NCBI RefSeq assembly: GCF_022045235.1
Contig: NW_027266271.1
Span: 22,878,001 to 22,942,000, forward strand
From: Haliotis cracherodii
Lineage: Eukaryota
DNA: 64,000 nt
Direction: 5' to 3'
Below, one piece after another: positions 35,401-49,948 of this stretch (positions are counted from its first letter, which is position 1; the number at the start of each line of letters is the position of its first letter). Under the pieces are notes generated by a model. It worked only from the letters and a program-made list of their open reading frames with translations, did not search any database and was not told the origin of the DNA. Made by a program: the position numbers and the translations under genes.

Positions 35401-38400
35401 TAGCATGATATCACCTTACGCAGAGATAGCGTACATTTTATGATAATCTTGGAATCGGTTATCAGTATAAACATTACATGGGATAGAAAGAACCTAAACA
35501 CCAGATTTTGATGATATATGTCAAGATGAACATGACAACAGTCATTGGGATATTTTCTGCATGTTTTTTACGAATTTGTTTACACTGTTCAACATGTTAG
35601 TCCGCTTGATCATGTAAATTATGTTGATTCATAGCTGTTATCGATTTGCAGACCTAGTTCTGTTGTTTATTTCTCAATTTATATCAAATAAACCAAACTT
35701 TTGCATTTGTATATTTATTTGTTGCAGTGCTAGCAGGGGCTCTGTTGGAGCAGGCTGAGCAACTTCTAGACCGCGGCATCCATCCGATCCGTGTGGCCGA
35801 TGGTTATGAGATGGCAGCTAATGTGGCAGTAGAGGAACTGAATAGGATAAGCGAGACATTCGGTGTGAATCTCAAAGAATCTGAACCACTTGTCAAACTG
35901 GCAATGACAACACTTGGCTCAAAAATGTAATTATTTAGAGATTAAAAACAGACGTAGCTTGAACAGTTTGTTTACTCCCATTGTCAATGAGGGACGGTCT
36001 ACAACATTAGCCACTTATTCGCTTCTTCCCAAGGCAAGGGAGTTAACTGACTGTACAAGTCCAGTTCCAATGTGTCATACCACTTTTTCCTGTGAATTTT
36101 TGTTTCTGTTATCGACCACTGGTATGCTTGACATATTTAATTGTGACAGGATGCTGTGTTATGGCTGAAATATGACTGAAGTAAAATTTCACACTTCCTG
36201 CAAATTTTCTGTTGTAAAAACTGGTAATGTACTGCAATAGTTTCCTTATTCTTTCCTAGTGTAAACCGATGCCACCGGCAGATGGCAGAAATTGCAGTGA
36301 ATGCAATCATGTCTGTTGCCGACTTGGACAGGAAGGATGTGGACTTCGAGCTGATCAAAATTGAGAGCAAAGTTGGAGGAAAGCTGGAGGACACAATGCT
36401 GGTCAAAGGAGTCATAGTGGACAAGGATATGAGCCATCCACAGATGCCCAAGGTAGGTTATGTCTTACCATGATGATGTAGGAACAAACCGTAGAAACTA
36501 ACCCTTTTTAGTCTACAAATCCTTATAATGATAACATATAGTAAACCCCTTAAAAATGGCAAATTGCTACTCTTCCTTGTGATACCTTAATTTTTTTAAT
36601 TATTTTTTTTTTGCATTCAATGGCCTTATTTAAACTGTACTATTTTGAATGTTTTCGGTCTTTGAATTTTAAGATTACTATTATGGTTGCTTTGCAACTG
36701 TGGAAAATATCTTAAGTTATTTAAGAACATATGACATCCAATGTTCAACGTTATTTTTTATTTTATTTTTTAAAACTTTTTTATTGTTCCCAGATATGTA
36801 GATTGATACAGTATTCTGTCAGACATATTTCGAATTGCATAGAGTGGCACAATACTCTTAAAAAAATTAACAGAGAGCTATGAATCAAATGCTGAGAATA
36901 AAGGTGACCATTTTTTGTTATGATACCTTAATTATTGGGAAGTTTGGCAAGGGCTATAGGACCAGTGCCAATTTCTGTGGTTGATGAATATCCATCTACA
37001 GAGCAAAGCCCTAGGTAGGCATTGGTGAAAGGTAAGATGTTTAGAAATCTAATAAATTTCAAATGAGATTTGAAACTTCAAATTATTACATGGGTGGTTG
37101 TGTCCAAGGCATGTCAAATTTCTGCCAGTTTTCACCATTAACTGAGTGGGCCAGACAACATGCCAGAGGAAATCATCCCGAACCATTGTCAGACTTACTC
37201 AATGAGTCTCACACACTGATAAGGATGAGACATTTACGTTGTATCAATTAACAATTTCTATTCAAGTTCCAAACTCCTTTAACAGTGGTAGAAACTGACA
37301 TTTTTCGTCCACTAGTTCTTATAATGATAACATATAGCAAAACCCTTAATTTTTTTTCTAAAAGTCCTCAAGGTAACTTAATTATTGGGCAATTTGGCCA
37401 GGACTAGTGCCAATTTCTAACACTGCTTTAAGATATTACAAGATTAACATGATTAATGCACTTCCCATGCCACACAGACCACATTAATGAGCCTCTTCAG
37501 CAACCTATGCTTGCCGTAAAAGGCAACTGTTCTAGTCGTAAGAGTCGGATAACGGAATCGGGTGGTCAGGCTTGCTGACTTGGTTGTTGCATGTTATCGT
37601 ATCCCAATTGCGTGGATCTATGATCATGTCAATCACTGGCTTGTGTGGTGGTTCAGACTTGAATTTTTTACGGCGTTACGGCGTTAAACAGAAACAAATT
37701 TAACGTTTATGGTGTTGGAGACACACTCTCTCCAATTTCATTAAAATCAGAGGGTGCACGGGTGACCCAAGTCGTCTAAGGTGCCACAATTTGCTGTGCA
37801 GAGTTGAATCCCTTGGGCACGCCAGAAACCTTTGAGTGTGGGTTCGAATCCCAGTTCACCCTGATTATGTTTCTAGGTTTGTCAGCACCATACCCATGCT
37901 CGTGGGTTTCACCAAAGAGATAAATGTCTTAGACCTGCATCACTTCAGTCTTTCCTCCCACATTAAGCCGACACGCAGCGATATAACTGGAATACTGTTA
38001 AAATCATCGTTAAACCCAACTCACTCACCTTTAAAATCAGATATTAGTCATCACTTATGCTAAACAAAGACTTTTGCTATGTTATAAGGACTAGAGGGCT
38101 AAAGCGTTTAGTTTCTATCACTGTATAACTAGAGGTGGTCAACGGACACTTCTGGGGCAGGTAGGTGATGAGATATTGTATGAGTGCTTCAGTCAATCTC
38201 TAGCCACGAACAATCAGCACTGCAACATAACAAGCCAATGAACATGAAGAAAACCATTAAGATCAGTCAAAATGACGTTTTTATTCTTATTGAAAGTTAC
38301 TTCATACAACTAGAAAAAAATATAAATATAAAATGTTTGATAGGCATTACTTAGAAGTTGACGGATGACAAGTCTTGCTTGACAACGGTATAAGGATCTA

Positions 38401-41400
38401 TACCGAAACGTCGCCTTTTACAGTATTAAAGAAGTTGTTATCCATAAAAATTGTGTCTATCAGGTAAATATAAGTCCCAAAATATTGACCATCAAGGACA
38501 ACTTTATTTCTACCAACAGCTATGTAATAAGAACTGATGAGCTGTTGACTAGTGGTATTTAGCTGGTATCCTGAATTGGTTGCATATTATCTTTGTAAGT
38601 TTGTACATCTAACTTGGGATTTTTAACTGTTTAGATTATATATATATTGGCATGTCAAATTTCTGCCAGTTTTCACCATTAACTGAGTGGACCAGACAAC
38701 ATGCCAGAGGAAATCATCCCGAACCATTGTCAGACTTACTCAATGAGTCTCACACACTGATAAGGATGAAACATTGCTAATAGTTATGTGTTCATGTACA
38801 GTACACATTAAACGATAATGTATGAAATGCTGATGGTTTGTGAACATGTTCTTCCAGATGGTCAAGGATGCCAAGATCGCCATTTTGACCTGTCCCTTTG
38901 AGCCCCCAAAGCCCAAGACTAAGCACAAGCTTGATGTCAAGTCCGTAGAGGACTACAAGAAGCTTAGGGAATATGAAATAAAGAAGTTTGAAGATATGGT
39001 TCAGTCTGTAAGTATCCGATATCTGTATGGGGGCGGTGTGGTAGCCTAGTGGTTAAATTGTCCATCCAGCTGAAGGCCCGGGTTCGATTTCGATTTCCCA
39101 CATGAGTACAATGTGTGAAGCCCATTTCTGGTGTCCCTCACCGTGATATTGCTGGAATATTACAAAAAGTGGCATAAAACCACTCGCTCGCTGTATAGGT
39201 GGTGGAGTAGCCAAGTTGTAAAAGCATTTGCTCATCACACTGAACATGCTGAAGGCCTGGGTTGTATATCCCCATGTGGGTTAAGTGTGGACACATTTCT
39301 TGTCACCAGGGGTGATATTGCTGAAAAACTTGATATGTCAGTAATAACTCTGGGTATTTTGGTGTTACGTTAGGATGTTTCGATATATATTTGTGTTTTC
39401 CCAATGATGAAATTTGGAATTACCGATTGATTACGAATGAAACTAACCGAGCGGCAATATTTTCTGAGGGAATGGTAATGTTGACCTCTGCAAATGTGTA
39501 CGTTAGGCTTGGGTGGTATTGATATGAAGTTACTGCTTGCAGGTGAAGGACAAGGGCGCTAATCTAGTCATCTGCCAGTGGGGCTTTGATGATGAGGCCA
39601 ACCACCTGTTGCTGCAGAAGCAGTTACCAGCTGTTCGTTGGGTCGGTGGGCCTGAAATCGAGGTGATTATTACTCTCCATTCCCTGATAGAACCAGAGAT
39701 GGTGCTAATTTCATGCAATTGAAAAATTTGATATTTTAAAGTTGGTGTTACACAATGTATTCTCCAAGACATATTTGTTTGCAGGTTATGAGTTATAAAC
39801 AGGTTCATATTGAAAACATCTGTAGCCCCTTGAGTGAGTTTCTCTGTGATGAAAATTGGAATTACCGTTTGATAATAAATGAAACCACCCTAGCGGCATT
39901 TATTTCTGAGAGAAACTGGAGGCCAGTCTTAGAAATTCACTTCTAGGGGATGAGTGTGAACCTTATTTCAGAGGTCCTCAGTGTTTTTAGCTAGACCTGT
40001 GTGAACAATACAAAAATATTTGCTGTCTACATTATCTGTTGCTTTTATTCAGTTCCAATTTAGCATAATTGAAACATTGAGAACTGGTTGAGAATGATCA
40101 TCCTCAAATGCTACGAGGTCATTGAGGACTACCATCATTGGATATGTGCTTGTCAGCACAGTTTAAGTCTCAGGCTAGTGTAAATGTCAGTGACTGCCAT
40201 GCACAAGTTACAGCATCGCGACAGGTGTGAAATGAAGACAGGCATTGTATCCCTTTAGTACCTAAGGTTCCTTGCTATTCAAATACAGTTGGAGCAGCAA
40301 ACGTCCCTGAGATCACACCAGAATAAATAGGAGTATACTAGGGCTGCAACAAATACACTGAGGTGAATATGATTCATATCAAAAATATAGGGTAAAGAAT
40401 ACGAATATTAATTCACGAATACAACAAGTCAGCAGTTGTATTATTTTCAGTGAAACAATAGCAACATAAATTATTTGACATGGTTTGTTTATCATTTATA
40501 TATTATACATTTATATATTATACATTTATATACTGCACTTATCCAGGTACGAGTATCTGCTCAAATGCGACAATGACCAGTGACCACAATACTGTCAAAT
40601 TAAAAAGTATGAGAGTTGTAGAATAACGAATTCAATTCATGAATGGATACAGTTCTATTCATCAAATACGCGATTGAATCGAATTGAATTAGAATAATCA
40701 ATTTTCGAAATGGCCAAGAGGATCCCTTTTACATTGAGTAGGTTGCTTTGAGGGAGTAGACCTGTTTTAAATGTTTTCCATGAGTATGGCAATCATTATG
40801 ACGAAAGGATTTGTCCATTTAGTCGATGTTAAACATTCAACGTTTCTCTGTGATGAAAATTGGAATTACCGTTTGATACATATGAAACTACCCTAGCGGC
40901 ATTTATTTCTGAGAGAAACTGAATAAGGCTATGTTGGAGACCTGTTAGAAGTAAGTACTCATTTGTTGGACATGGATCTATGCACAGTGTCCTCAACAAC
41001 CTGAAAAGAAATTGCCCCGAAATGTATGATTCCAAGAGAATTATATCCATTGGCTGAAAACTTTTCAAATCCATAGTATTATTCCTTTACTTTCAGTGTG
41101 ATTTCTTTCGTATGTTATCTTTTACAAAAATAAGAAATGAAACAAACCTAGCTGCTTATTTTTCTGAGAGAAAGGAACCTGAAAGATTTTATCTTCACCA
41201 TTGTTTCTATGGTATTTTCATTTCTTGAATGATTGGACTGACACGGTTTGTGTAATTAGCAGCTTAATAACAAACAAATGAAGTTTTATAAAATCAATCT
41301 GGTTTCATTTCATTCGAACCATCCTGGAAATCAAGTTAGGATGTGGAAACATGAAAATAAAGAATGAGGTGTCACTCGTGATGAGATTGTAAGAAACATG

Positions 41401-44400
41401 CCACAACTTGTTAGTGTCAGCCATGATGTTGGCCAATACTAAATGGTTGAAACTATCCTGTGTCAGTAAATAATTAAGTCCAATTTTAATAGGGTAAGTT
41501 CAAGTTATATGCATTATAAACATTCATACATGTCATTCTTTATACTTATTGTTTAAGAAGAATTTCAAGTTTCTCTGTGATGAAAATTGGAATTACCGTT
41601 TGATAATCAATGAAACTACCCTAGCGGCATTTATTTTTGAGAGAAACTGAATAAGGCTATGTTGGAGACCTGTTAGAAGTAAGTACTCATTTGTTGGACA
41701 TGGATCTATGCACAATGTCCTGAACAAACTGAAAAGAAATTGCCCTGAATCATGTGATTCCAAGAGAATTATATCCATTGGCTGAAAACTTTTCAAATCC
41801 ATTGTATTATTTTCGTTGGCGGGGGATATAGAAATGGGCTTCGGACGTCACGTTTCGTTTCTGGAGCATAACTCATAAACCATTCAATATTTTTTCATCA
41901 AACTTTGCAGGTCTGTCATGTACATGCTGAACTGGTGTCTTTTGCTATTTAGAAATTTTAGAATTTTTTCTTTTTTTCGTTACCATGGCAGCAAGATGGA
42001 CTGAGGTTCCAAACTCATCTTTTTTTTACAATTTCCATGACAAGTTCCACCTCAGTTAAAAAAGGTTAGGGTTTGTTTAGATTTAATTATGTCATAAATT
42101 CTGCAACAGGGGCGGGGGATATAGCCACGTTGGTGGCAAACTCTTGTTCCTTTACTTTCTGTGTGATTTCTTCCATATGTTATCTTTTACAAAAATAAGA
42201 AATGAAACAAACCTAGCTGCTTATTTTTCTGGGAGAAAGGAACCTGAACGATTTTATTTTCACCATTGTTTCTATTTCCCCTGATATTGAACAAGTTTGA
42301 CATTTTCAACAATGTAGGATCTGTAAGCAAATTAACAACCAAAGTAGTAACAATTTAAAATCTAGGTTTGTTAATTACATAATGAAAACCAAGTCAGGCA
42401 TAAGTTAGAATCATGTAAAATGAAGAGGTTTTGATCCTGCGAAAATATCATTAACGATATTATTGATTTTCTGTTGGCAAATGCATTAAGCTCTGTTTGA
42501 GAGAAAATGTACATTGAGAAAGCTAGCAGTGCGAAGAAAGGTTCCCATTTGAATGAAGTAGATTCTGTTAAGAAGCATGAAGACACAGCTGGTTTCACAT
42601 GTTACATTTGGGTAAATAGGTGTTATGCAGTAAATGAGATTCTTTCTCAAATTTAATGTAACTGCCATGTAATTAACAGTTTACGCACGTTCTGATTTTC
42701 AATTACTTGTTAAAGATGCAGTTTCTCTGTGATGAAAATTGGAATTACCGTTTGATAATAAATGAAACTACCCTAGCGGCATATATTTCTGAGAGAAAAT
42801 AGCATTAAAGATTGTTTTTCGATTTAGCAGAATTTTGTGCATTTTCATTTCTTGAATGATTGGGCTGACAAGGTTTGTGTAGTTAGCAGCTTAATAACAA
42901 GCAAATAAAGGTTTATAAAATCAATCTGGTTTCATTTCGTTTGAACCATCCTGGAAATCAAGTTTGGATGTGGAAACATGAAAATAAAGAATGAGGTGTC
43001 ATTCTTGATGAGATTGTAAGAAACATGCCACAACTTGTTAGTGTCCACCATGATGTTGGCAATACTAAATGGTTGAAACTATCCTGTGTCAGTGAATTAT
43101 TAAGTCCAATTTTAATAGGGTAAGTTCAAGTTATATGCATGATAAACATTCATACATGTCATTCTTTAAACTTATTGTTTAAGAAGTATATCAGGTTTCT
43201 CTGTGATGAAAATTGGAATTACCGTTTGATAATGCATGAAACTACCCTAGCGGCATTAATTTCTGAGAGAACTTGAATAAGGCTCTGTTGGAGACCTTTT
43301 GGAAATATTACTTCAAAGTATGGAGACAGTGCCTGGAATCTTAATGATTGTATAAATAGAACATCTATCCATTTTTGAAAATAGATCTATGCACACAATC
43401 GCCTGAACAGACTAAACAAGAAAATGCCCAGAATCCTGTCATTCAAAGAATAATGCATGGGCTGAAGACTTGCACATATGTCCAGTGCTTAAGCAGTACA
43501 GTTTTCAAATCCATCAGTGGTATTCCTTTACTTATTGTATCATTTCCTACATACTTTATCATGTTTTACAGTTGATCGCCATAGCAACTGGAGGAAGAAT
43601 CGTTCCACGGTTTGAAGAGCTGACCACTGAGAAGCTGGGAAGTGCTGGCATCGTGAAGGAGTTGAACTTTGGAACAACCAAAGAGAGAATGTTGGTCATC
43701 GAGGAGTGCAAGAACTCGAGAGCCGTCACCATCTTCATCAGGGGAGGCAATAAGATGGTGAGTGTCAAGTTGTTGGGATTGTGAGAGTTCAGAGATTTAT
43801 CTAGGAATCCAAATTAAGTACACTTGCCAGCCGAATTAGGAGAAATCGTTCAAAATTTGATCTATTTTTTTTTTCAGTTTCCTTGTTTTAGAGGTATTTT
43901 ACATTGCATTCAGTGCAATAATGTTAAACTAATCTGAAGTACTATTGTCAGTGAAATTCAAGTTGCCTTACAAAGCCATAACACTTATTAATATAAAAGC
44001 ATGAAATGGTAAATGTTATGTTGCAGTTTGGATTTTATTTCATTGATATTTGCTGCATACTCTGGGCCAAATATCAGCACCTAATCAGGTTGAGATAAAT
44101 TCCCAATTCATGTTCTGGTAAATGTTTTGTATTGTAATTAATCCAACACTGTTTATATCAGTCAACATGTCTTTGTCATTTCTAATCTGAGTACGTCTCC
44201 TCTTTTGGCATGTCAAATTTCTGCCAGTTTTCACCATTAACTGAGTGGACCAGACAACATGCCAGATGAAATCATCCCGAACCATTGTCAGACTTACTCA
44301 ATGAGTCTCACACACTGATAAGGATGAAACATTGACTAACCTTGATTTCAAAGTAGTTTGTCAGATGTTGATTGTATGACAAAAAGGTCAGAAAGTACTT

Positions 44401-47400
44401 GTAATACTTTGTTTTTTATGTTTGTGTAGATTGTGGAGGAAGCTAAGCGAAGTCTTCATGATGCCTTGTGTGTAATCCGAAACATCGTCCGAGACAACCG
44501 TGTTGTGTATGGAGGTGGTGCTCCCGAGATCGCCTGCTCACTAGCTGTGTCTAAAGCTGCAGATAAGGTAGGGCTAGCTAGACCTTACCGTTGTCCTGAA
44601 ATTGTGTATTTGGTGTAGAAATTACGGTTGACACAAATTTTATGGTTTCAGACATAGATGGACTAATGTTTATAGAATCTAATTGTGCAGGTTGATCAGT
44701 TTCATCAAAGGAAGGTTGAGTGTTAATTATGATGAAGCTGATTATGATCAAATTTTCTGTTGCAGTGCATTTCTTGCTTGTTTGGAGAATTATTTTTTTT
44801 TAATAATTGTTTTGTTTTTTGTAGATTTCCACTCTTGAGCAATATGCAGTGCGTGGTTTCTCTGAAGCTTTGGAAAGCATTCCTTTAGCATTAGCAGAAA
44901 ACAGTGGTCAGGCCCCAATCCACACGCTAGCCGATGTGAAATCTCGACAAGTCAAGGAGAAGAACCCTAGGCTTGGAATCGACTGTCTCCTAAGAGGAAC
45001 AAATGGTATGTTGGTAAATAAGTTGCGACAAGTTGAACACCAGATTGGACTAGAAAGGCCTTTATACCAGATGGTATAATTTGCCTTAAGTCCCCGGCTC
45101 AAACATGTTTTCCTGGCCAACTTGCGGACCAATTTGAAAGTATAATCTTTATACTAAGTGCAATGGCGGATATAATCAGATAATCTTGACCAGTCTGGTT
45201 ATCAACTTGCAAAGTAAGCACATTGTTGCACGATCTGGATAAAAGTACACATATTTTAATGCAAGTGTCTTAGAAAGTTAATCATGTTGCATTTATTGTT
45301 AGACCAGGATGCATACACTTTGCAGAAACATGTAAAGTGCAATACAGTTTTGGGTTCAGGGTCTGTTAGGAAACATTATGGGACAGTCTGTAGCTCTGTG
45401 TAGCGACAAGTCAATATTAAATTCGTTTATAGGAAGCAGCACAGATAAAGTTACCACAGTTTTGGTCCCACTACCAACAAATGAGTCAGATCACGCGTTA
45501 ATGTAACCACCCAATCCCCAGTGGAGTCGCATATTTCACTACATTTTACCACGCCTAGTTGATGTTTGGGTTCACGTTTAAAGTTATGAACAGGTTGACA
45601 CTTGAAACATCAGTAGGGCCCTGAGTGAATTTCTCTGTGATGAAAATTGGAATTACCGTTTGATAATGCATGAAACAACCCTAGCGGCATTTATTTCTGA
45701 GAGAAACGTGGAGGCCCACCTTAAATATTTCTTTCTATGACTGGTCCCGAGGACTAGTGTCAACCTTATTTCACTGATCCTAAGTATTTGTTGCTAGACC
45801 TGCTTGAACAATACAGTGTTTACGGTGTTTACATTTTCTGTTGGTTTTATTCAGTTCCAATTTCACACAATTGAAGAATTGAGAGCTGGTTCCAAATTAT
45901 AGTGCTTAATGCTACACGTCTATGAGCACTACTATCAATGGATTTTTACTTGTCAGCTCAATTAAATAACCATGGGCTAGCGTGAATTTCGAAGGCTGGC
46001 ATGCACAAGTTACGACATCTCGACAGGTGTGAAATGACCTTCAGCATTGTATCCCTTTAGTACATAATGTTTATTGCTTATCAGATACAGTTGGAACTGC
46101 ATACTTCCGGGAGATCACACCTGAATGTTTGTTGTTTAATGCCGCACTCTGCAATATTCCAGCTATATGACTGCGGTCTGTAAATAATCGAGTCTGGGCC
46201 AGACAATCCAGATCATGAGCATAGATCCACGCAATTGGGATATGATGACATGCATCAACCAAGTCAGCAGGCTGTCCACCCGATCCCGTTGGTCGCCTCT
46301 TACGGCAAGCATGGGTTTCTGTCACACATTCATTATGAATAATAACTATAGGTATACTACTCCTTTTGATAGGGAGATTTTTTTTATCTTTCCAAGAGAC
46401 ACAGAACAACATCTGATTTAGGGATTTCCCTATCGAAAGTTTAAGTTGTGTATATTAGCAAACGGTGAACTTAAGATTTTCATATATTCAAATGACCAAA
46501 AGATAATGTTTACATAGTTTGCCTTGGGGAGAGTGGGGCTCTTTGCAAATGTTTTCCATGTGTATGGCAATAATTATGACATTGCAATAAAAATTTGCAG
46601 GAAAGATAAGGTTTACAATGTCCAATTGGTATTTGCATTAATTCCTTTTGGTTAGAACATTAATGATATGTAAAGTTATATTCATCCATGGGACATGTGG
46701 AAAAATCATAACGACCAGTACCATAAATGTTTGGGAAATCAAAGGTTTTGTCCATAAAGTTGATGTTGGAACAAAAACGTTTCTCCATGATGAAAATTGG
46801 AATTACCGTTTGATACATATGAAACTATCCTTGCGGCATTTATTTCTGAGAGAAACAAAAGTGGAAGTATTGAATTTATCGGTTCACGTAATTCACAAAC
46901 TTTGAACATGTTGAAGCTATTGAAGTGTATTACCTCATTCCTCTATACATGTGTCCTGATTACAGTTGATTTGTCATCTCGACAAGATACCCATGCTGAT
47001 GGGTGACGCCAAAGGGATAAACATCCAAGACCTGCATCTAAAAAAATGCACAAAATGTTCATAATACTAGTCTCTGATCATTACTGAATCAATCAGTTTG
47101 TTTTTGGTCAATGAGTTCAGTTTTACTTTTATTTAATTCACAGAATGTTAGGTTGTTCTAATGATAGTAATAATCATGTTAAATTAGCATTGTTGCAAAA
47201 TATCCATTAAAAATCATTGTTTGACAGTCCAATGTCTCCATGATGAAAATTGAAATTACCATTTGATACCAATGAAACTGTCCTAGCTGCATTTATTTCT
47301 GAGAGAAATTTATTCAAATGGAAGAATTAACACTTATCAGATGGTACACAAAGTACATGATCCAGACTACCAGTTGTCCCACCTTCATTTTTTGTGGAAG

Positions 47401-49948
47401 ATTCGGTGGCTGAGTGGGTCAGATTGCTGACTGTGTCAGATGGGACTCAACCAATAGAAAAAGTACTAGAATTTTGTACTTGCAGTCCGAAACTTATATA
47501 ACTGACTAATGATTTAATGAATAATTAATGAGGGAAACAAATGTGAAAGATTGTCTTTCAATTTAACATTGCCTTGTGTATGGAGGATTGGACTGACAAT
47601 GTTTTAGTAATGAGTAGCTTAATGACAGCAAAGTTGTAAAAGATCAAAATTTGGTTTTCATTTGAAGCTTGGGTTTTTGATACATTAAGCTATAGGATGC
47701 GGGTTGAACATTCATTCTTGATAATATTGTAAGAAACATGATGATGATGCAACAACTTATGTCATTAGCCATGATGGCTTATACAAAATGGTTAAAACGA
47801 TCCTTTGTCAGTGAATAATCAATGTCATTCAATTTCAATATGCAAAGTTCACCTCGTATACATAATTAACATTCTTACATGGCCATTAGGCCATTCTCCT
47901 AAATTCCTTATTAAAAAGAATGTGAAGTTTCTCTGTGATGAAAATTGGAATTACCGTTTGATAATGCATGAAACTACCCTAGCGGCATTTATTTCTGAGA
48001 GAAATGGAATATAAAAGATTTTATTTCCACCATTGTTTCCATTTACCGTGACAGTGAACAAGTTGCCATTTCAACAATGTATGAGCTGTGAACAGCTTTA
48101 TAACAACCAAAGTAGTAACCATTTAATATCTAGTTATATTAATTATATAATGACACCCGTGAAGATCTGGGGTAGAATAGGTCTTCAGCAACCCATGCTT
48201 GCCGTAAAAGGTGACAATGCTTGTCTTAAGAGGCGACTAACAGGGTCGGTTGGTAAGGCTCGCTGACTTAGTTGATGCATGTCATCGTATCCCAATTGAG
48301 TAGATCGATGCTCATGATATCAATCAATGGTTTTTTCGGTCCAGATATGATTATTTACAGACTGCCATCATATGGGTGGAATAGTGCTGAGTGCGGGGTT
48401 AAACAACAAACAAAACAAAATTATACAATGAAAACCATGTCCGACATAAGTCAAGGCAACTGGTATTGATTCAAGCTGAAATATATATTGGAAAACTTAA
48501 GGATTCATCATGATCCTTGATTATGAACAACTTGCTTCTGGCTACAATGAGCTCTGTTCATCCTCAGAGAAAATGTTCATTGAGAATACTATCCGTGCAG
48601 TGTGAGGAAAGAGTCTCGTTCGAATTAAGTAGACTCTAAGCATAGTGTAGACTCAGCAGATTTCAAATGATGTATTCTGACAGCTTTTCTGTACACTTGT
48701 CAAAACTAATAAGTTTCTCCATGATGAAAATTGGAATTACCGTTTGATATTTATGAAACAATCCTAGCGGCAAAACTTTCTGAGAGAAACTTGGCTATTG
48801 AATTTTGGGTTGTATTTTTTTGAAAGAATTCACTTAAGCAGAAGAACGAACACATTATCAGTGATCATGTCCAACTACATTTCCCACAAATAAAACCTTC
48901 CCTTGATTCAATGTTGGGAGTAAAGTAACAGTGTGGCCAGCCACCGTGACTGTGTTTACACTCAGCAATATTCTGGCAGCTACATGACGGCAGTCTGTAA
49001 ATAATAGTCTGGACCAGACAATCCAGTGATTGACGTAATGAGCATCGATCCATGCAATTGGGATATGATGACATGCATCAACCAAGTCAGCAAGCCTGAC
49101 CATCCAATCCTGTTAGTCGCCTCTTACAACAAGCATTGTCACTTTTTACGACAATCATGGGTTGGTGAAGACCTATTCTAACGCGGATCTTCACGGGTCC
49201 TGTGACTGTACCGAACTTGGGGGATTGTGCGAGTTGACGAGTAGCTTTAAGTTTCCCTGCATTATAAAACACGTCGAGTTATAACTTATTCGCTGCGGTT
49301 TCTTACAGCCCTAAGGTTACTTTACCTTTAATTGTTTCTCTGTGATGAAAATGGAATTACCGTTTGATATTGCATGAAACTACCCTAGCGGCATTTATTT
49401 CTGAGAGAAACTAAGTCTGACGCATCAAAATGATGTCATCCTTTTCGTGGTAATAAACTGGTAGCAAATGTATGAAATGTGTATGATTGAAAGAGAAACG
49501 TTTTGCTTACATACTTGTGCTGCAAGGTTTAAATTATCATCTTTGTTGTCTGGTAAATACATCCTTCCCTGATCATGCTGACCGATAAATCAACTTTTGA
49601 AGAGATAAGTATGCATATTGAGAATATTCAGTTGACTGGGCAAGAACTTTTGTGAAAGTCTGGTAGCCTGAGTAATGGAACCGGTACAAAAAACACTAAG
49701 TTTGTAATCTTGCTGTCCCCATTTCTATGATCTTAAATGTTTACTAAGAAACATGGACACATTTAAGAAGTCTGTTATTCAGACGGTGGTTTTCATGATC
49801 ATGTCAATCTCTTTTTGTATTTTCAGATATGAAGGAACAGAATGTGATTGAGACCCTAACTGCCAAGAAGCAGCAGCTGCTATTAGCCACACAACTGGTT
49901 AGGATGATCCTCAAGATCGACGACATCAGAGCACCAAATGAAATGTGA
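32465..49948 (+). CDS. CCT5: T-complex protein 1 subunit epsilon (CCT5), 539 aa; exons 32465-32569, 33237-33462, 35728-35926, 36260-36452, 38858-39007, 39543-39662, 43572-43757, 44430-44567, 44825-45005, 49827-49948
   Basis: Motifs [80 protein letters not shown]. All introns GT-AG; 1620 nt in frame. Confidence 0.97.
37108..37235 (+). ncRNA. Box H/ACA snoRNA (SNORA15-like 5' hairpin), copy 1 (CCT5 intron 4)
   Basis: Hairpin GGCATGT..ACATGCC, H box AGAGGA, hairpin TCATCC..GGATGA, ACA plus 3 nt; pockets antisense to 18S. Confidence 0.8.
37751..38030 (+). mobile_element. Family A SINE in CCT5 intron 4
   Basis: Full-length copy with B box GGTTCGAATCCC. Confidence 0.8.
38648..38776 (+). ncRNA. 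Box H/ACA snoRNA, copy 2 (intron 4)
   Basis: Near-identical to copy 1 in unrelated flanks; ends 81 nt before the 3' splice site. Confidence 0.82.
39029..39190 (+). mobile_element. Family B SINE in CCT5 intron 5
   Basis: A/B boxes and shared tail. Confidence 0.75.
39398..39472 (+). ncRNA. Box C/D snoRNA, SNORD65/snR77-like, copy 1 (CCT5 intron 5)
   Basis: C box ATGATGA, guide TGGAATTACCG, D' TTGA, D CTGA, terminal stem TTCCC/GGGAA; ends 70 nt before the 3' splice site. Confidence 0.85.
39839..39915 (+). ncRNA. Box C/D snoRNA SNORD65-like, copy 2 (intron 6)
   Basis: GTGATGA, TGGAATTACCG-t-TTGA, CTGA; stem TTTCTC/GAGAAA. Confidence 0.8.
40843..40918 (+). ncRNA. Box C/D snoRNA SNORD65-like, copy 3 (intron 6)
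   Basis: Same boxes, guide and terminal stem. Confidence 0.8.
41570..41646 (+). ncRNA. Box C/D snoRNA SNORD65-like, copy 4 (intron 6); D box mutated to TTGA
   Basis: Guide intact; D box CTGA changed to TTGA. Confidence 0.65.
42722..42798 (+). ncRNA. Box C/D snoRNA SNORD65-like, copy 5 (intron 6)
   Basis: Same boxes, guide and stem. Confidence 0.8.
43196..43271 (+). ncRNA. Box C/D snoRNA SNORD65-like, copy 6 (intron 6)
   Basis: Same boxes, guide and stem. Confidence 0.8.
44206..44334 (+). ncRNA. Box H/ACA snoRNA, copy 3 (intron 7)
   Basis: Near-identical; H box AGATGA differs only at an N position of ANANNA. Confidence 0.82.
45630..45706 (+). ncRNA. Box C/D snoRNA SNORD65-like, copy 7 (intron 9)
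   Basis: Same boxes, guide and stem. Confidence 0.8.
46780..46855 (+). ncRNA. Box C/D snoRNA SNORD65-like, copy 8 (intron 9)
   Basis: ATGATGA, intact guide, CTGA, stem. Confidence 0.8.
47235..47308 (+). pseudogene. Degenerate SNORD65-like copy 9 (intron 9)
   Basis: Boxes intact but the guide has two substitutions (TGAAATTACCA). Confidence 0.65.
47928..48004 (+). ncRNA. Box C/D snoRNA SNORD65-like, copy 10 (intron 9)
   Basis: Same boxes, guide and stem. Confidence 0.8.
48156..48420 (+). mobile_element. Family C element in CCT5 intron 9
   Basis: Full-length copy; an inverted copy lies at 48955-49198. Confidence 0.78.
48714..48789 (+). ncRNA. Box C/D snoRNA SNORD65-like, copy 11 (intron 9)
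   Basis: ATGATGA, intact guide, CTGA, stem. Confidence 0.8.
49335..49410 (+). ncRNA. Box C/D snoRNA SNORD65-like, copy 12 (intron 9)
   Basis: Same boxes, guide and stem. Confidence 0.8.

What the first reader, a model, noticed from the sequence alone, without database searches (positions are those of the whole stretch)
37108..44334. Triplicated H/ACA snoRNA with an apparently chimeric pair of guides (18S Psi1367 and Psi109)
Seen: three near-identical ~128-nt copies in unrelated flanks, each hairpin-ANANNA-hairpin-ACA. The hairpin 1 pocket (AATT / CCAGACAA, 14 nt to the H box) pairs with 18S UUGUCUGG-UU-AAUU, i.e. human U1367. The hairpin 2 pocket (GAACCAT / CTGAT, 14 nt to ACA) pairs with 18S AUCAG-UU-AUGGUUC, i.e. 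human U109. Known (recalled): human Psi1367 is guided by SNORA15, hosted in the paralog CCT6A, and Psi109 by the SNORA42/SNORA80 family. Inference: a hairpin-shuffled or ancestral dual guide, and a persistent link between the Psi1367 guide and CCT-family hosts.
Basis: partly seen in the sequence, partly recalled or inferred. Interest (0 to 1): 0.75.

Follow-up and report, generated by a model that had tools for sequence, protein, structure and literature searches.

The report
Three-copy dual-guide H/ACA snoRNA in CCT5
Three introns' worth of one small guide RNA sit inside a chaperonin gene; each copy looks built to convert two conserved uridines of 18S ribosomal RNA to pseudouridine, an ordinary job done here by an unusual pairing of two guide modules.

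Summary
Three 128-nt copies (37108-37235, 38649-38776, 44207-44334, + strand) are 96-99% alike in unrelated flanks. They are the only copies found in the 1.18-Gb genome. Each folds as hairpin-AGAGGA-hairpin-ACA.

Each pocket has one best site in this genome's own rRNA: 18S U1347 (the site papers list as human 18S-1367) and 18S U109. Both lie 14 nt from their box.

The host is CCT5 (TCP-1 epsilon), introns 4 (two copies) and 7.

No Rfam family reaches its threshold. The 5' half aligns to SNORA15 and the 3' half to SNORA42/80, so "chimeric relative to the vertebrate families" is supported.

A metagenome contig (L013) from another eukaryote carries the same two pockets in the same order. Nine stem pairs are changed on both sides relative to the window copies. 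That RNA sits in an RNA polymerase II largest-subunit (RPB1) intron, beside a SNORA15-like and a SNORA42-like neighbour.

The pairing is therefore conserved, hairpins evolve as modules, and the proposed lasting tie to CCT hosts is not supported.

Verdict: a canonical snoRNA and a new member of a known kind. Other triplicated intronic H/ACA snoRNAs were noted elsewhere in this genome by the scan.

The parts
37108..37235 (+). H/ACA snoRNA copy 1. It lies mid-intron 4 of CCT5, 1622 nt upstream of exon 5.
   Evidence: It differs from copy 2 at 3 columns: U-A becomes U-G at the base of upper stem 1, one nt changes before ACA, and the third nt after ACA changes.
38649..38776 (+). H/ACA snoRNA copy 2, in intron 4 of CCT5. 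It ends 81 nt before the 3' splice site.
44207..44334 (+). H/ACA snoRNA copy 3, in intron 7 of CCT5. It ends 95 nt before the 3' splice site. Its H box reads AGAUGA.
38656..38661 (+). Copy 2, hairpin 1, 5' strand of the pocket (CAAAUU). AAUU pairs with 18S 1349-1352.
38692..38698 (+). Copy 2, hairpin 1, 3' strand of the pocket (CCAGACA, plus the next A). It pairs with 18S 1339-1346. The pocket starts 14 nt before the H box.
   Evidence: It is identical in the Rfam SNORA15 consensus and in L013 a and b.
38706..38711 (+). Copy 2, H box AGAGGA (fits ANANNA).
38721..38727 (+). Copy 2, hairpin 2, 5' strand of the pocket (GAACCAU). It pairs with 18S 111-117.
38757..38761 (+). Copy 2, hairpin 2, 3' strand of the pocket (CUGAU). 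It pairs with 18S 104-108. The pocket starts 14 nt before ACA.
38771..38773 (+). Copy 2, ACA box, followed by 3 nt of conserved block.
36453..38857 (+). Intron 4 of the CCT5 host gene (approximate splice sites read from the sequence). It holds copies 1 and 2.
   Evidence: Exon pieces end and start at profile position 236, so no coding exon is missing between them.
43761..44429 (+). Intron 7 of the CCT5 host gene. It holds copy 3.
   Evidence: Profile positions run to 389 on one side and from 389 on the other.
32465..49945 (+). Host gene: T-complex protein 1 subunit epsilon (CCT5), with at least 10 coding exons.
   Evidence: All 10 exon pieces score best against TIGR02343 and together cover profile positions 2-531 of 532.

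Best explanation
These are three gene copies of one canonical box H/ACA small nucleolar RNA. They are carried in sense orientation in introns 4 (two copies) and 7 of the CCT5 chaperonin gene.

Inferred mechanism:
- Each copy is released from the spliced or cleaved intron.
- It assembles with the dyskerin/Cbf5-Nop10-Nhp2-Gar1 proteins.
- It then uses two independent pockets. The 5' hairpin places 18S U1347 (the site numbered 1367 in human) in the catalytic site, and the 3' hairpin places 18S U109 there. Both would be converted to pseudouridine.

Shown: the sequence anatomy, the unique fit to this genome's own 18S, the copy number, the host gene, and conservation of pockets and boxes with compensated stems in a second organism.

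Inferred: expression, protein assembly and the two modifications.

In evolutionary terms, the RNA joins a SNORA15-type 5' module to a SNORA42/80-type 3' module. In the second organism the same joined form lies in consecutive introns next to a SNORA15-like RNA and a SNORA42-like RNA. The hairpins therefore behave as exchangeable or independently decaying modules within a local cluster.

The near-identity of the three copies, with no flank similarity, is best explained by old local duplication kept uniform by selection plus gene conversion confined to the RNA (inference).
For: - Anatomy and copy number.
- Own rRNA targets: each pocket has a single best site among 1309 U positions. Shuffled pockets match as well in 6 of 500 and 15 of 500 trials.
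- Both sites are listed as human pseudouridylation targets of SNORA15 and SNORA42/80 (passages of PMC7072173 and PMC6466398).
- Rfam: the three copies are the best SNORA42 matches in the window (37.2, 34.7, 33.9 bits). Copy 2 was the only match the whole-genome search reported. The SNORA15 model aligns the 5' hairpin.
- All 4 differences among the copies fall where the fold and boxes tolerate them.
- Second organism: L013 3814-3944 has the same pockets, order and 14-nt distances. Of 33 modelled pairs, 93.9% of cells pair. Nine pairs are changed on both sides, a count reached by 0 of 500 shuffles and by 0-1 pairs in the six slid controls.
- Covariance model R1 scores L013 a at 113 bits, c at 45.6 bits and b at 33.3 bits.
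- L013 b hairpin 1 fits 18S U1347 and c hairpin 2 fits 18S U109.
- Sense orientation, with two of three copies 81 and 95 nt upstream of a 3' splice site.
Against: - There is no RNA evidence. The run search listed 24 holders, none on record as RNA.
- There are no modification data.
- No Rfam family reaches gathering: 37.2 against 70 for SNORA42 and 27.9 against 47 for SNORA15.
- The 5' arm of pocket 1 is only 4 bp.
- Hairpin 2 could also be read one register over, on U110 (6+6 pairs). That register starts the upper stem with a U-C mismatch (my reading of the sequence).
- The minimum-energy fold of hairpin 2 pairs UGU with the earlier ACA, not the register needed for U109.
- The L013 a sequence folds no better than shuffles (z -0.80; 38 of 200 fold as well).
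- The pair counts rest on effectively one comparison (three near-identical rows against one), and the structure was drawn from the window copies.
- Copy 1 lies 1.6 kb from the next exon and shares its intron with copy 2. Whether it is processed is unknown.
Confidence: 0.85

Rival explanations
1. The dual guide is the older form. An ancestor with the 1367-type and 109-type pockets duplicated. In some lineages one daughter kept only the 5' guide (SNORA15-like) and another kept the 3' guide and re-aimed its 5' pocket (SNORA42/80-like). This is a rival only for the origin, not for the function.
For: - The same pairing, in the same order, occurs in two organisms whose RPB1 exons are only 61-89% identical in protein, and in different host genes.
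- The Rfam consensus sequences of SNORA15 and SNORA42 both carry the GCAUG...CAUGC lower stem that the window copies and L013 c also have.
- This genome has no separate SNORA15-like or SNORA42-like candidate.
Against: - There are only two organisms, and one has unknown identity.
- In L013 the lower stem of a is identical to that of b (GCACAG/CUGUGC) and differs from c. This points to recent exchange or duplication inside that cluster.
- The genome searches score only the best candidates, so a separate guide here could have been missed.
Confidence: 0.4
2. The dual guide is a recombinant. Unequal crossing-over or gene conversion between neighbouring SNORA15-like and SNORA42-like genes in one host gene joined the 5' hairpin of one to the 3' hairpin of the other. 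This happened possibly more than once. In this genome the parents were later lost.
For: - L013 holds all three forms in consecutive introns within 1.7 kb.
- Hairpin 1 of a is closest to b (44 of 58) and hairpin 2 of a is closest to c (50 of 70).
- The shared GCAUG/CAUGC stem and H-box region would give a recombination site.
- Families alike in one hairpin and diverged in the other are reported in fungi (passages of PMC5824354).
Against: - The identity margins are small on short sequences (for example O-b 41 of 58 against O-c 38 of 60).
- Independent origin of the same pairing in two lineages is less economical.
- No parent forms were found in this genome.
Confidence: 0.35
3. The copies are inert snoRNA-derived repeats (retro-copies or decaying duplicates) that make no functional RNA. 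The real guides for these sites lie elsewhere.
For: - There is no expression evidence.
- Identity stops exactly at the ends of the mature RNA, as it would for a copy made from RNA.
- Copy 1 sits mid-intron.
Against: - All three copies are in sense orientation in one highly conserved housekeeping gene, and none lies elsewhere in 1.18 Gb.
- No poly-A tail or target-site duplication is visible in the flanks.
- Boxes and pockets are intact in all three copies, and all 4 differences are tolerated ones.
- No better candidate guide for either site was found in the genome.
- Pockets and boxes are conserved with compensated stems in L013.
Confidence: 0.07

Closest known systems
Rfam RF00406, SNORA42/SNORA80 family (human ACA42/ACA67; targets 18S-109 and 18S-572 per the table in PMC6466398)
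   Same: The 3' hairpin aligns column for column, including both pocket strands (CCCGAACCAUUG ... CACUGA) and the ACA tail. The lower stem of hairpin 1 (GCAUG/CAUGC) and the AGAG start of the H box also match. The predicted target is the same, 18S U109.
   Different: The score is 37.2 bits against a gathering score of 70. The interior of the 5' hairpin does not align, and its pocket is aimed at a different site (U1347 rather than the 572 site). The host gene is CCT5, not KHDC4.
Rfam RF00398, SNORA15 (human ACA15; target 18S-1367, host CCT6A per the tables in PMC7072173 and PMC6466398)
   Same: The 5' hairpin aligns: lower stem GCAUG/CAUGC and an identical 3' pocket strand CCAGACA, followed by an A-rich H box. 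The predicted target sequence is the same.
   Different: The score is 26-28 bits against a gathering score of 47. The 3' hairpin is unrelated and here carries a second working pocket. The host is CCT5, a different paralogue, and in L013 the SNORA15-like RNA sits in RPB1.
Fungal H/ACA families that share one hairpin and differ in the other (HACA_2 and HACA_31; an antisense element switched between hairpins in AJ632008/snR86), in 'The fungal snoRNAome', PMC5824354 (passages read)
   Same: The same kind of hairpin-by-hairpin evolution is reported: a guide function kept in one hairpin while the partner hairpin differs between families.
   Different: Those are fungal families with other targets. 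Here all three combinations are seen side by side in one animal-type gene (L013), and the joined form is shared by two organisms.

Membership tests
Box H/ACA guide snoRNA (class) | Hairpin-hinge-hairpin-tail fold with an H box (ANANNA) in the hinge and ACA 3 nt from the 3' end | tested here: met
   folds and the-5 sequences show AGAGGA or AGAUGA in the hinge and ACA followed by 3 conserved nt in 3 of 3 copies. The mature 3' end itself was not observed.
Box H/ACA guide snoRNA (class) | Internal pocket whose two strands pair on either side of a target U plus one nt, with the pocket 14-16 nt upstream of the H or ACA box | tested here: met
   8+4 pairs at 18S U1347 and 5+7 pairs at 18S U109. Each is the single best site among 1309 U positions. 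Both distances are 14 nt (sequence).
Box H/ACA guide snoRNA (class) | Conservation of boxes and pocket strands, with compensatory change in the stems, in other species | tested here: met
   9 of 33 pairs are changed on both sides against L013 a, reached by 0 of 500 shuffles. Only one other organism was available.
Box H/ACA guide snoRNA (class) | Stable RNA of about 130 nt bound by dyskerin/Cbf5, Nop10, Nhp2 and Gar1 | not testable with these tools
Box H/ACA guide snoRNA (class) | The target uridines are pseudouridines in this species | not testable with these tools
   No modification data were available. Papers list the matching human sites as SNORA15 and SNORA42/80 targets.
Rfam SNORA42/SNORA80 (RF00406) | Score at or above the curated gathering score (70 bits) over the whole model | tested here: not met
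   37.2, 34.7 and 33.9 bits. Only the 3' hairpin and the frame of hairpin 1 align.
Rfam SNORA15 (RF00398) | Score at or above the curated gathering score (47 bits) over the whole model | tested here: not met
   27.9, 27.3 and 26.0 bits. Only the 5' hairpin aligns.
Intron-encoded snoRNA of a housekeeping host gene | Sense orientation inside an intron of an expressed host gene | tested here: met
   All 3 copies are on the + strand, in introns 4 and 7 of CCT5. Host expression was not measured.

The most novel reading that the evidence does not exclude
The 1367-type plus 109-type dual guide is the ancestral animal form of what vertebrates carry as two separate families, SNORA15 and SNORA42/80. The shared GCAUG/CAUGC frame is its trace. 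The L013 gene, with joined, SNORA15-like and SNORA42-like forms in consecutive introns, has preserved the duplication-and-module-loss pathway in one locus.
Probability: 0.35. Interest if true: 0.5.

Novelty: new member of a known kind. Interest (0 to 1): 0.38.

Why it matters
The RNA itself is ordinary: a canonical pseudouridylation guide for two conserved 18S sites.

Its value is comparative in three ways.
- It links two vertebrate snoRNA families that Rfam keeps apart, through a form that carries one module of each.
- A second organism shows all three combinations side by side in consecutive introns. That is a clean natural example of H/ACA hairpins evolving as separate modules.
- The same RNA sits in CCT5 in one organism and in RPB1 in another. 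Host association is therefore loose at this depth, which removes the suggested CCT link.

It also adds annotation for a genome in which Rfam's curated thresholds find no snoRNA in this window.

Tried and rejected
- Rfam at gathering scores gave nothing in the 64-kb window.
- A 31-bit SNORA15 match elsewhere in the genome (L008) is a tandem repeat with a period of about 76 nt and no proper ACA tail, so I rejected it.
- The extra own-genome matches to the two pocket patterns number 7 and 1, against 6 and 1 for the reversed-pattern controls. None scores with model R1; the best is 10.8 bits at E 0.44. I treat them as chance.
- The second metagenome hit (L014) is AT-rich (28% GC), has phage-like open reading frames and no fold (z +0.71). 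It is chance.
- The single genome-contig hit lies in a bacterial MAG chromosome (L038). I treat it as chance and did not fold it. The viral-contig scan found none.
- The own RPB1 region was searched with R1, filters off, over 30 kb. Nothing scored above 12.4 bits.
- No convincing target was found on this genome's rRNA for the 5' pocket of L013 c or the 3' hairpin of L013 b. That organism's own rRNA was not available.
- Paper searches for a described 1367+109 dual guide, for fly guide names recalled from memory, and for mollusc snoRNA surveys returned nothing relevant. One search failed on a term format. Two papers were probed for SNORA15/42 terms with zero occurrences (PMC6984369 and PMC13736004). 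This does not show that the arrangement is unpublished. Most subscription papers are not held. Supplementary tables (for example family tables of snoRNA evolution studies) were closed and may list such orthologues. The Kehr et al. 2014 paper was seen only as a citation.
- The organism of L013 was not determined. The label 'abalone' for this genome comes only from an earlier AI note (s1-829578) and was not checked.

Full report
**What is there.** A repeat search of 36000-46000 finds one family of three 130-nt copies at 37106-37235, 38647-38776 and 44205-44334, with 96%, 100% and 99% identity to the reference copy. Aligned with 60-nt flanks, the identical block begins at GGCATG and ends two to three bases after an ACA. 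Outside it the three flanks are unrelated. Inside it only four columns vary. I place the RNA at 37108-37235, 38649-38776 and 44207-44334 on the + strand. A DNA search of the whole 1.18-Gb assembly returns three matches of three candidates, all of them these.

**Fold and boxes.** All three copies fold into two hairpins with internal loops, separated by AGAGGA (AGAUGA in copy 3) and followed by ACA plus three bases. Energies are -33.5, -34.9 and -35.8 kcal/mol, with z-scores of -2.3, -2.4 and -3.5. Of 200 shuffles each, 3, 3 and 0 fold as well.

The four differences among the copies are these:
- U-A becomes U-G at the base of upper stem 1.
- One change falls at an N position of the H box.
- One change falls at the base before ACA.
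- One change falls at the third base after ACA.
None touches a pocket strand or a defining box letter.

**Targets.** I took this genome's own rDNA unit. Rfam places 18S at 1-1859, 5.8S at 2163-2316 and 28S at 2619-6335 of L007.

A scan anchored each pocket at every one of the 1309 U positions of the three rRNAs. It required at least 3 contiguous pairs per arm and at least 9 in all. It gives exactly one site per pocket (U count):
- Hairpin 1 fits 18S U1347 with 8+4 Watson-Crick pairs.
- Hairpin 2 fits 18S U109 with 5+7 pairs.

Pockets with shuffled strands reach 12 pairs anywhere in 6 of 500 trials for hairpin 1 and 15 of 500 trials for hairpin 2. Both pockets start 14 nt before their box (sequence).

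Two caveats apply to hairpin 2:
- The U109 register needs UGU to pair with the second ACA of CACACAC. The minimum-energy fold uses the first.
- A U110 register (6+6 pairs) is arithmetically possible, but it opens the upper stem with a U-C mismatch (my reading of the sequence).

I did not align a human 18S. The equivalence of U1347 with human 1367 rests on the identical pocket in the Rfam SNORA15 consensus. It also rests on two paper tables read as passages. SNORA15 is given as 18S U1367 with host CCT6A (PMC7072173; PMC6466398). SNORA42 is given as 18S-109 and -572, with SNORA80, host KHDC4 (PMC6466398).

**Host gene.** Ten stop-free pieces on the + strand between 32450 and 49945 were searched one by one. 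All 10 score best against TIGR02343, T-complex protein 1 subunit epsilon. Together they cover profile positions 2-531 of 532. The host is therefore CCT5, not CCT6.
- Copies 1 and 2 share intron 4 (about 36453-38857). Copy 2 ends 81 nt before the acceptor. Copy 1 lies 1622 nt before it.
- Copy 3 lies in intron 7 (43761-44429) and ends 95 nt before the acceptor.

The same gene also carries many box C/D snoRNA copies in introns 5, 6 and 9. Earlier notes of the scan report these separately.

**Relation to known families.** At Rfam's gathering scores nothing in the window matches. With permissive thresholds the three copies give SNORA42/80 at 37.2, 34.7 and 33.9 bits (gathering 70) and SNORA15 at 27.9, 27.3 and 26.0 bits (gathering 47). 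The alignments are informative:
- The SNORA42 model aligns the whole 3' hairpin, including both pocket strands, plus the lower stem of hairpin 1 and the H box. It skips the interior of hairpin 1.
- The SNORA15 model aligns hairpin 1, with an identical CCAGACA strand and GCAUG/CAUGC stem. It aligns hairpin 2 poorly.

Both Rfam consensus sequences share the GCAUG...CAUGC lower stem.

Searching the whole genome with the two families gives no better candidate. SNORA42 finds only copy 2. SNORA15 finds the three copies plus a 31-bit hit that proves to be a tandem repeat. So 'chimeric with respect to the vertebrate families' is a fair description, and membership of either family by Rfam's criterion is not met.

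**A second organism.** One pattern covered the 3' strand of pocket 1, the H box, both strands of pocket 2 and ACA at the observed fixed distances, with two variable gaps.
- It found two stretches in the metagenome collection.
- It found one in 596 Gb of prokaryotic genomes, in a bacterial MAG, which I take as chance.
- It found none in viral contigs.

Of the two metagenome hits, L014 is an AT-rich phage-like contig without a fold. L013 (10,117 nt) is different. At 3814-3944 it carries the same two pockets in the same order with the same 14-nt distances, but with different stems.

Counted on the four-row alignment with the structure of the window copies, 93.9% of cells pair. Nine of 33 pairs are changed on both sides, which 0 of 500 shuffles reach. 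The six slid controls give 0-1 such pairs. This is in effect one comparison, and the structure came from one side of it. The count still far exceeds the controls. Against it, the L013 RNA alone folds no better than shuffles (z -0.80; 38 of 200).

**The L013 cluster.** L013 encodes the largest subunit of RNA polymerase II, with conserved exons and a long heptad-repeat tail. Its exons are 61-89% identical in protein to this genome's RPB1 on contig C67, so it comes from a clearly different organism. Model R1, built from the four sequences, finds three RNAs in L013: a at 3814-3944 (113 bits), c at 5319-5454 (45.6 bits) and b at 4479-4616 (33.3 bits). An exon at 4096-4206 separates a from b. The exon at about 4797-4997 separates b from c. 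They therefore occupy three consecutive introns.

The three RNAs look like this:
- RNA b has the 1347-type pocket in hairpin 1 (7+4 pairs on this genome's 18S) and an unrelated 3' hairpin.
- RNA c has another 5' pocket and the U109 pocket in hairpin 2 (9+7 pairs).
- Rfam gives b to SNORA15 (29.3 bits), c to SNORA42 (32.7 bits), and a to both (31.4 and 29.3 bits). All are below gathering.

Half-molecule identities point the same way, though with small margins. Hairpin 1 of a is closest to b (44 of 58). Hairpin 2 of a is closest to c (50 of 70). Hairpin 2 of the window RNA is closest to c (49 of 70). The lower stem of a equals that of b (GCACAG/CUGUGC). The lower stem and H box of c (GCAUGA...UCAUGCC AGAGGA) nearly equal those of the window RNA.

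**Host mobility.** This genome's own RPB1 has the matching exons within the 30 kb I fetched. The three matching introns contain nothing that R1 scores above 12.4 bits, E 0.41, with filters off. R1 over the whole genome finds only the three CCT5 copies (150 of about 247,000 first-look candidates scored, so weak relatives could be missed).

Pattern searches for each pocket separately give 10 and 4 matches, against 6 and 1 for reversed controls. Three matches in each set are the known copies, and none of the others scores with R1. The same RNA family therefore sits in CCT5 here and in RPB1 in L013. With the human host being CCT6A, two of three known hosts are CCT genes. However, they are different paralogues with unrelated introns. 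I see no support for a lasting link.

**How it most likely works.** Shown are the anatomy, the copy number, the unique fit to the own 18S, the host and the cross-species conservation. Three steps are inferred from established knowledge of H/ACA RNPs:
- The RNA is released from the CCT5 introns.
- It binds dyskerin/Cbf5, Nop10, Nhp2 and Gar1.
- It converts 18S U1347 and U109 to pseudouridine.

Introns with two H/ACA copies, and with five C/D copies, imply that this species can release more than one snoRNA per intron (inference).

The copies are 96-99% identical, including the apical loops, yet share no flank similarity. Segmental duplicates inside intron 6 of the same gene are only 93-95% identical, flanks included. 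This suggests that gene conversion confined to the RNA keeps the copies uniform (inference).

**Novelty.** Hairpin-wise evolution of H/ACA families is already described in fungi. Examples are families alike in hairpin 2 and diverged in hairpin 1, and a guide element switching hairpins (passages of PMC5824354). I found no description of a 1367+109 dual guide. The library is partial and supplements were closed. I rate it a new member of a known kind, with moderate comparative interest.

**Not done.** Expression and RNA ends remain untested. The run search listed 24 holders kept as contigs, none on record as RNA, with the best share 0.31.

Noticed in passing
window 39398-39475, 39838-39917, 40842-40920, 41569-41648, 42721-42800, 43195-43274, 45629-45708; further look-alikes near 46800 and 47920: A family of box C/D snoRNA copies (UGAUGA ... 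UGGAAUUACCG ... CUGA) lies in introns 5, 6 and 9 of the same CCT5 gene. They are 72-80% alike over 85 nt and match Rfam snoR77Y and U83B only weakly (20-30 bits, below gathering). The guide looks complementary to the 18S CGGUAAUUCCA stretch (my reading, not scanned). Earlier notes s1-829561 and s1-829838 cover it.
   Followed up: no
window 40882-41811, 41214-41681 versus 42841-43307, 41072-41210 versus 42137-42275: Segmental duplicates lie inside intron 6, 93-95% identical over 139-248 nt with flanks included. This contrasts with the flank-less identity of the H/ACA copies.
   Followed up: no
L013 4479-4616 and 5319-5454: Two further H/ACA snoRNAs lie in consecutive RPB1 introns of the metagenome contig. 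The 3' hairpin of the first and the 5' pocket of the second have no convincing target on this genome's rRNA.
   Followed up: partly
L008 about 1379-1780 (G000 contig C12, near 72.76 Mb): A tandem repeat with a period of about 76 nt mimics SNORA15 at 31 bits. It is a false positive of the family model.
   Followed up: yes
G000 C67:15537621-15537851 (+) and C67:15488049-15488291 (-): Two RPB1-like exon matches lie 50 kb apart on opposite strands, 87% and 75% identical to the L013 exon. This may be a second RPB1 copy or a pseudogene.
   Followed up: no
G000 contigs C10, C11, C12, C13, C23, C75: Full-length 18S genes were found on at least six contigs (13 matches scored), spaced about 9.4-9.6 kb apart where they are tandem. 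rDNA arrays therefore lie at several loci or on unplaced pieces.
   Followed up: no
L014 (metagenome contig, 12,939 nt, 28% GC): This densely coding AT-rich contig has phage-like open reading frames. It matched the search pattern by chance.
   Followed up: partly
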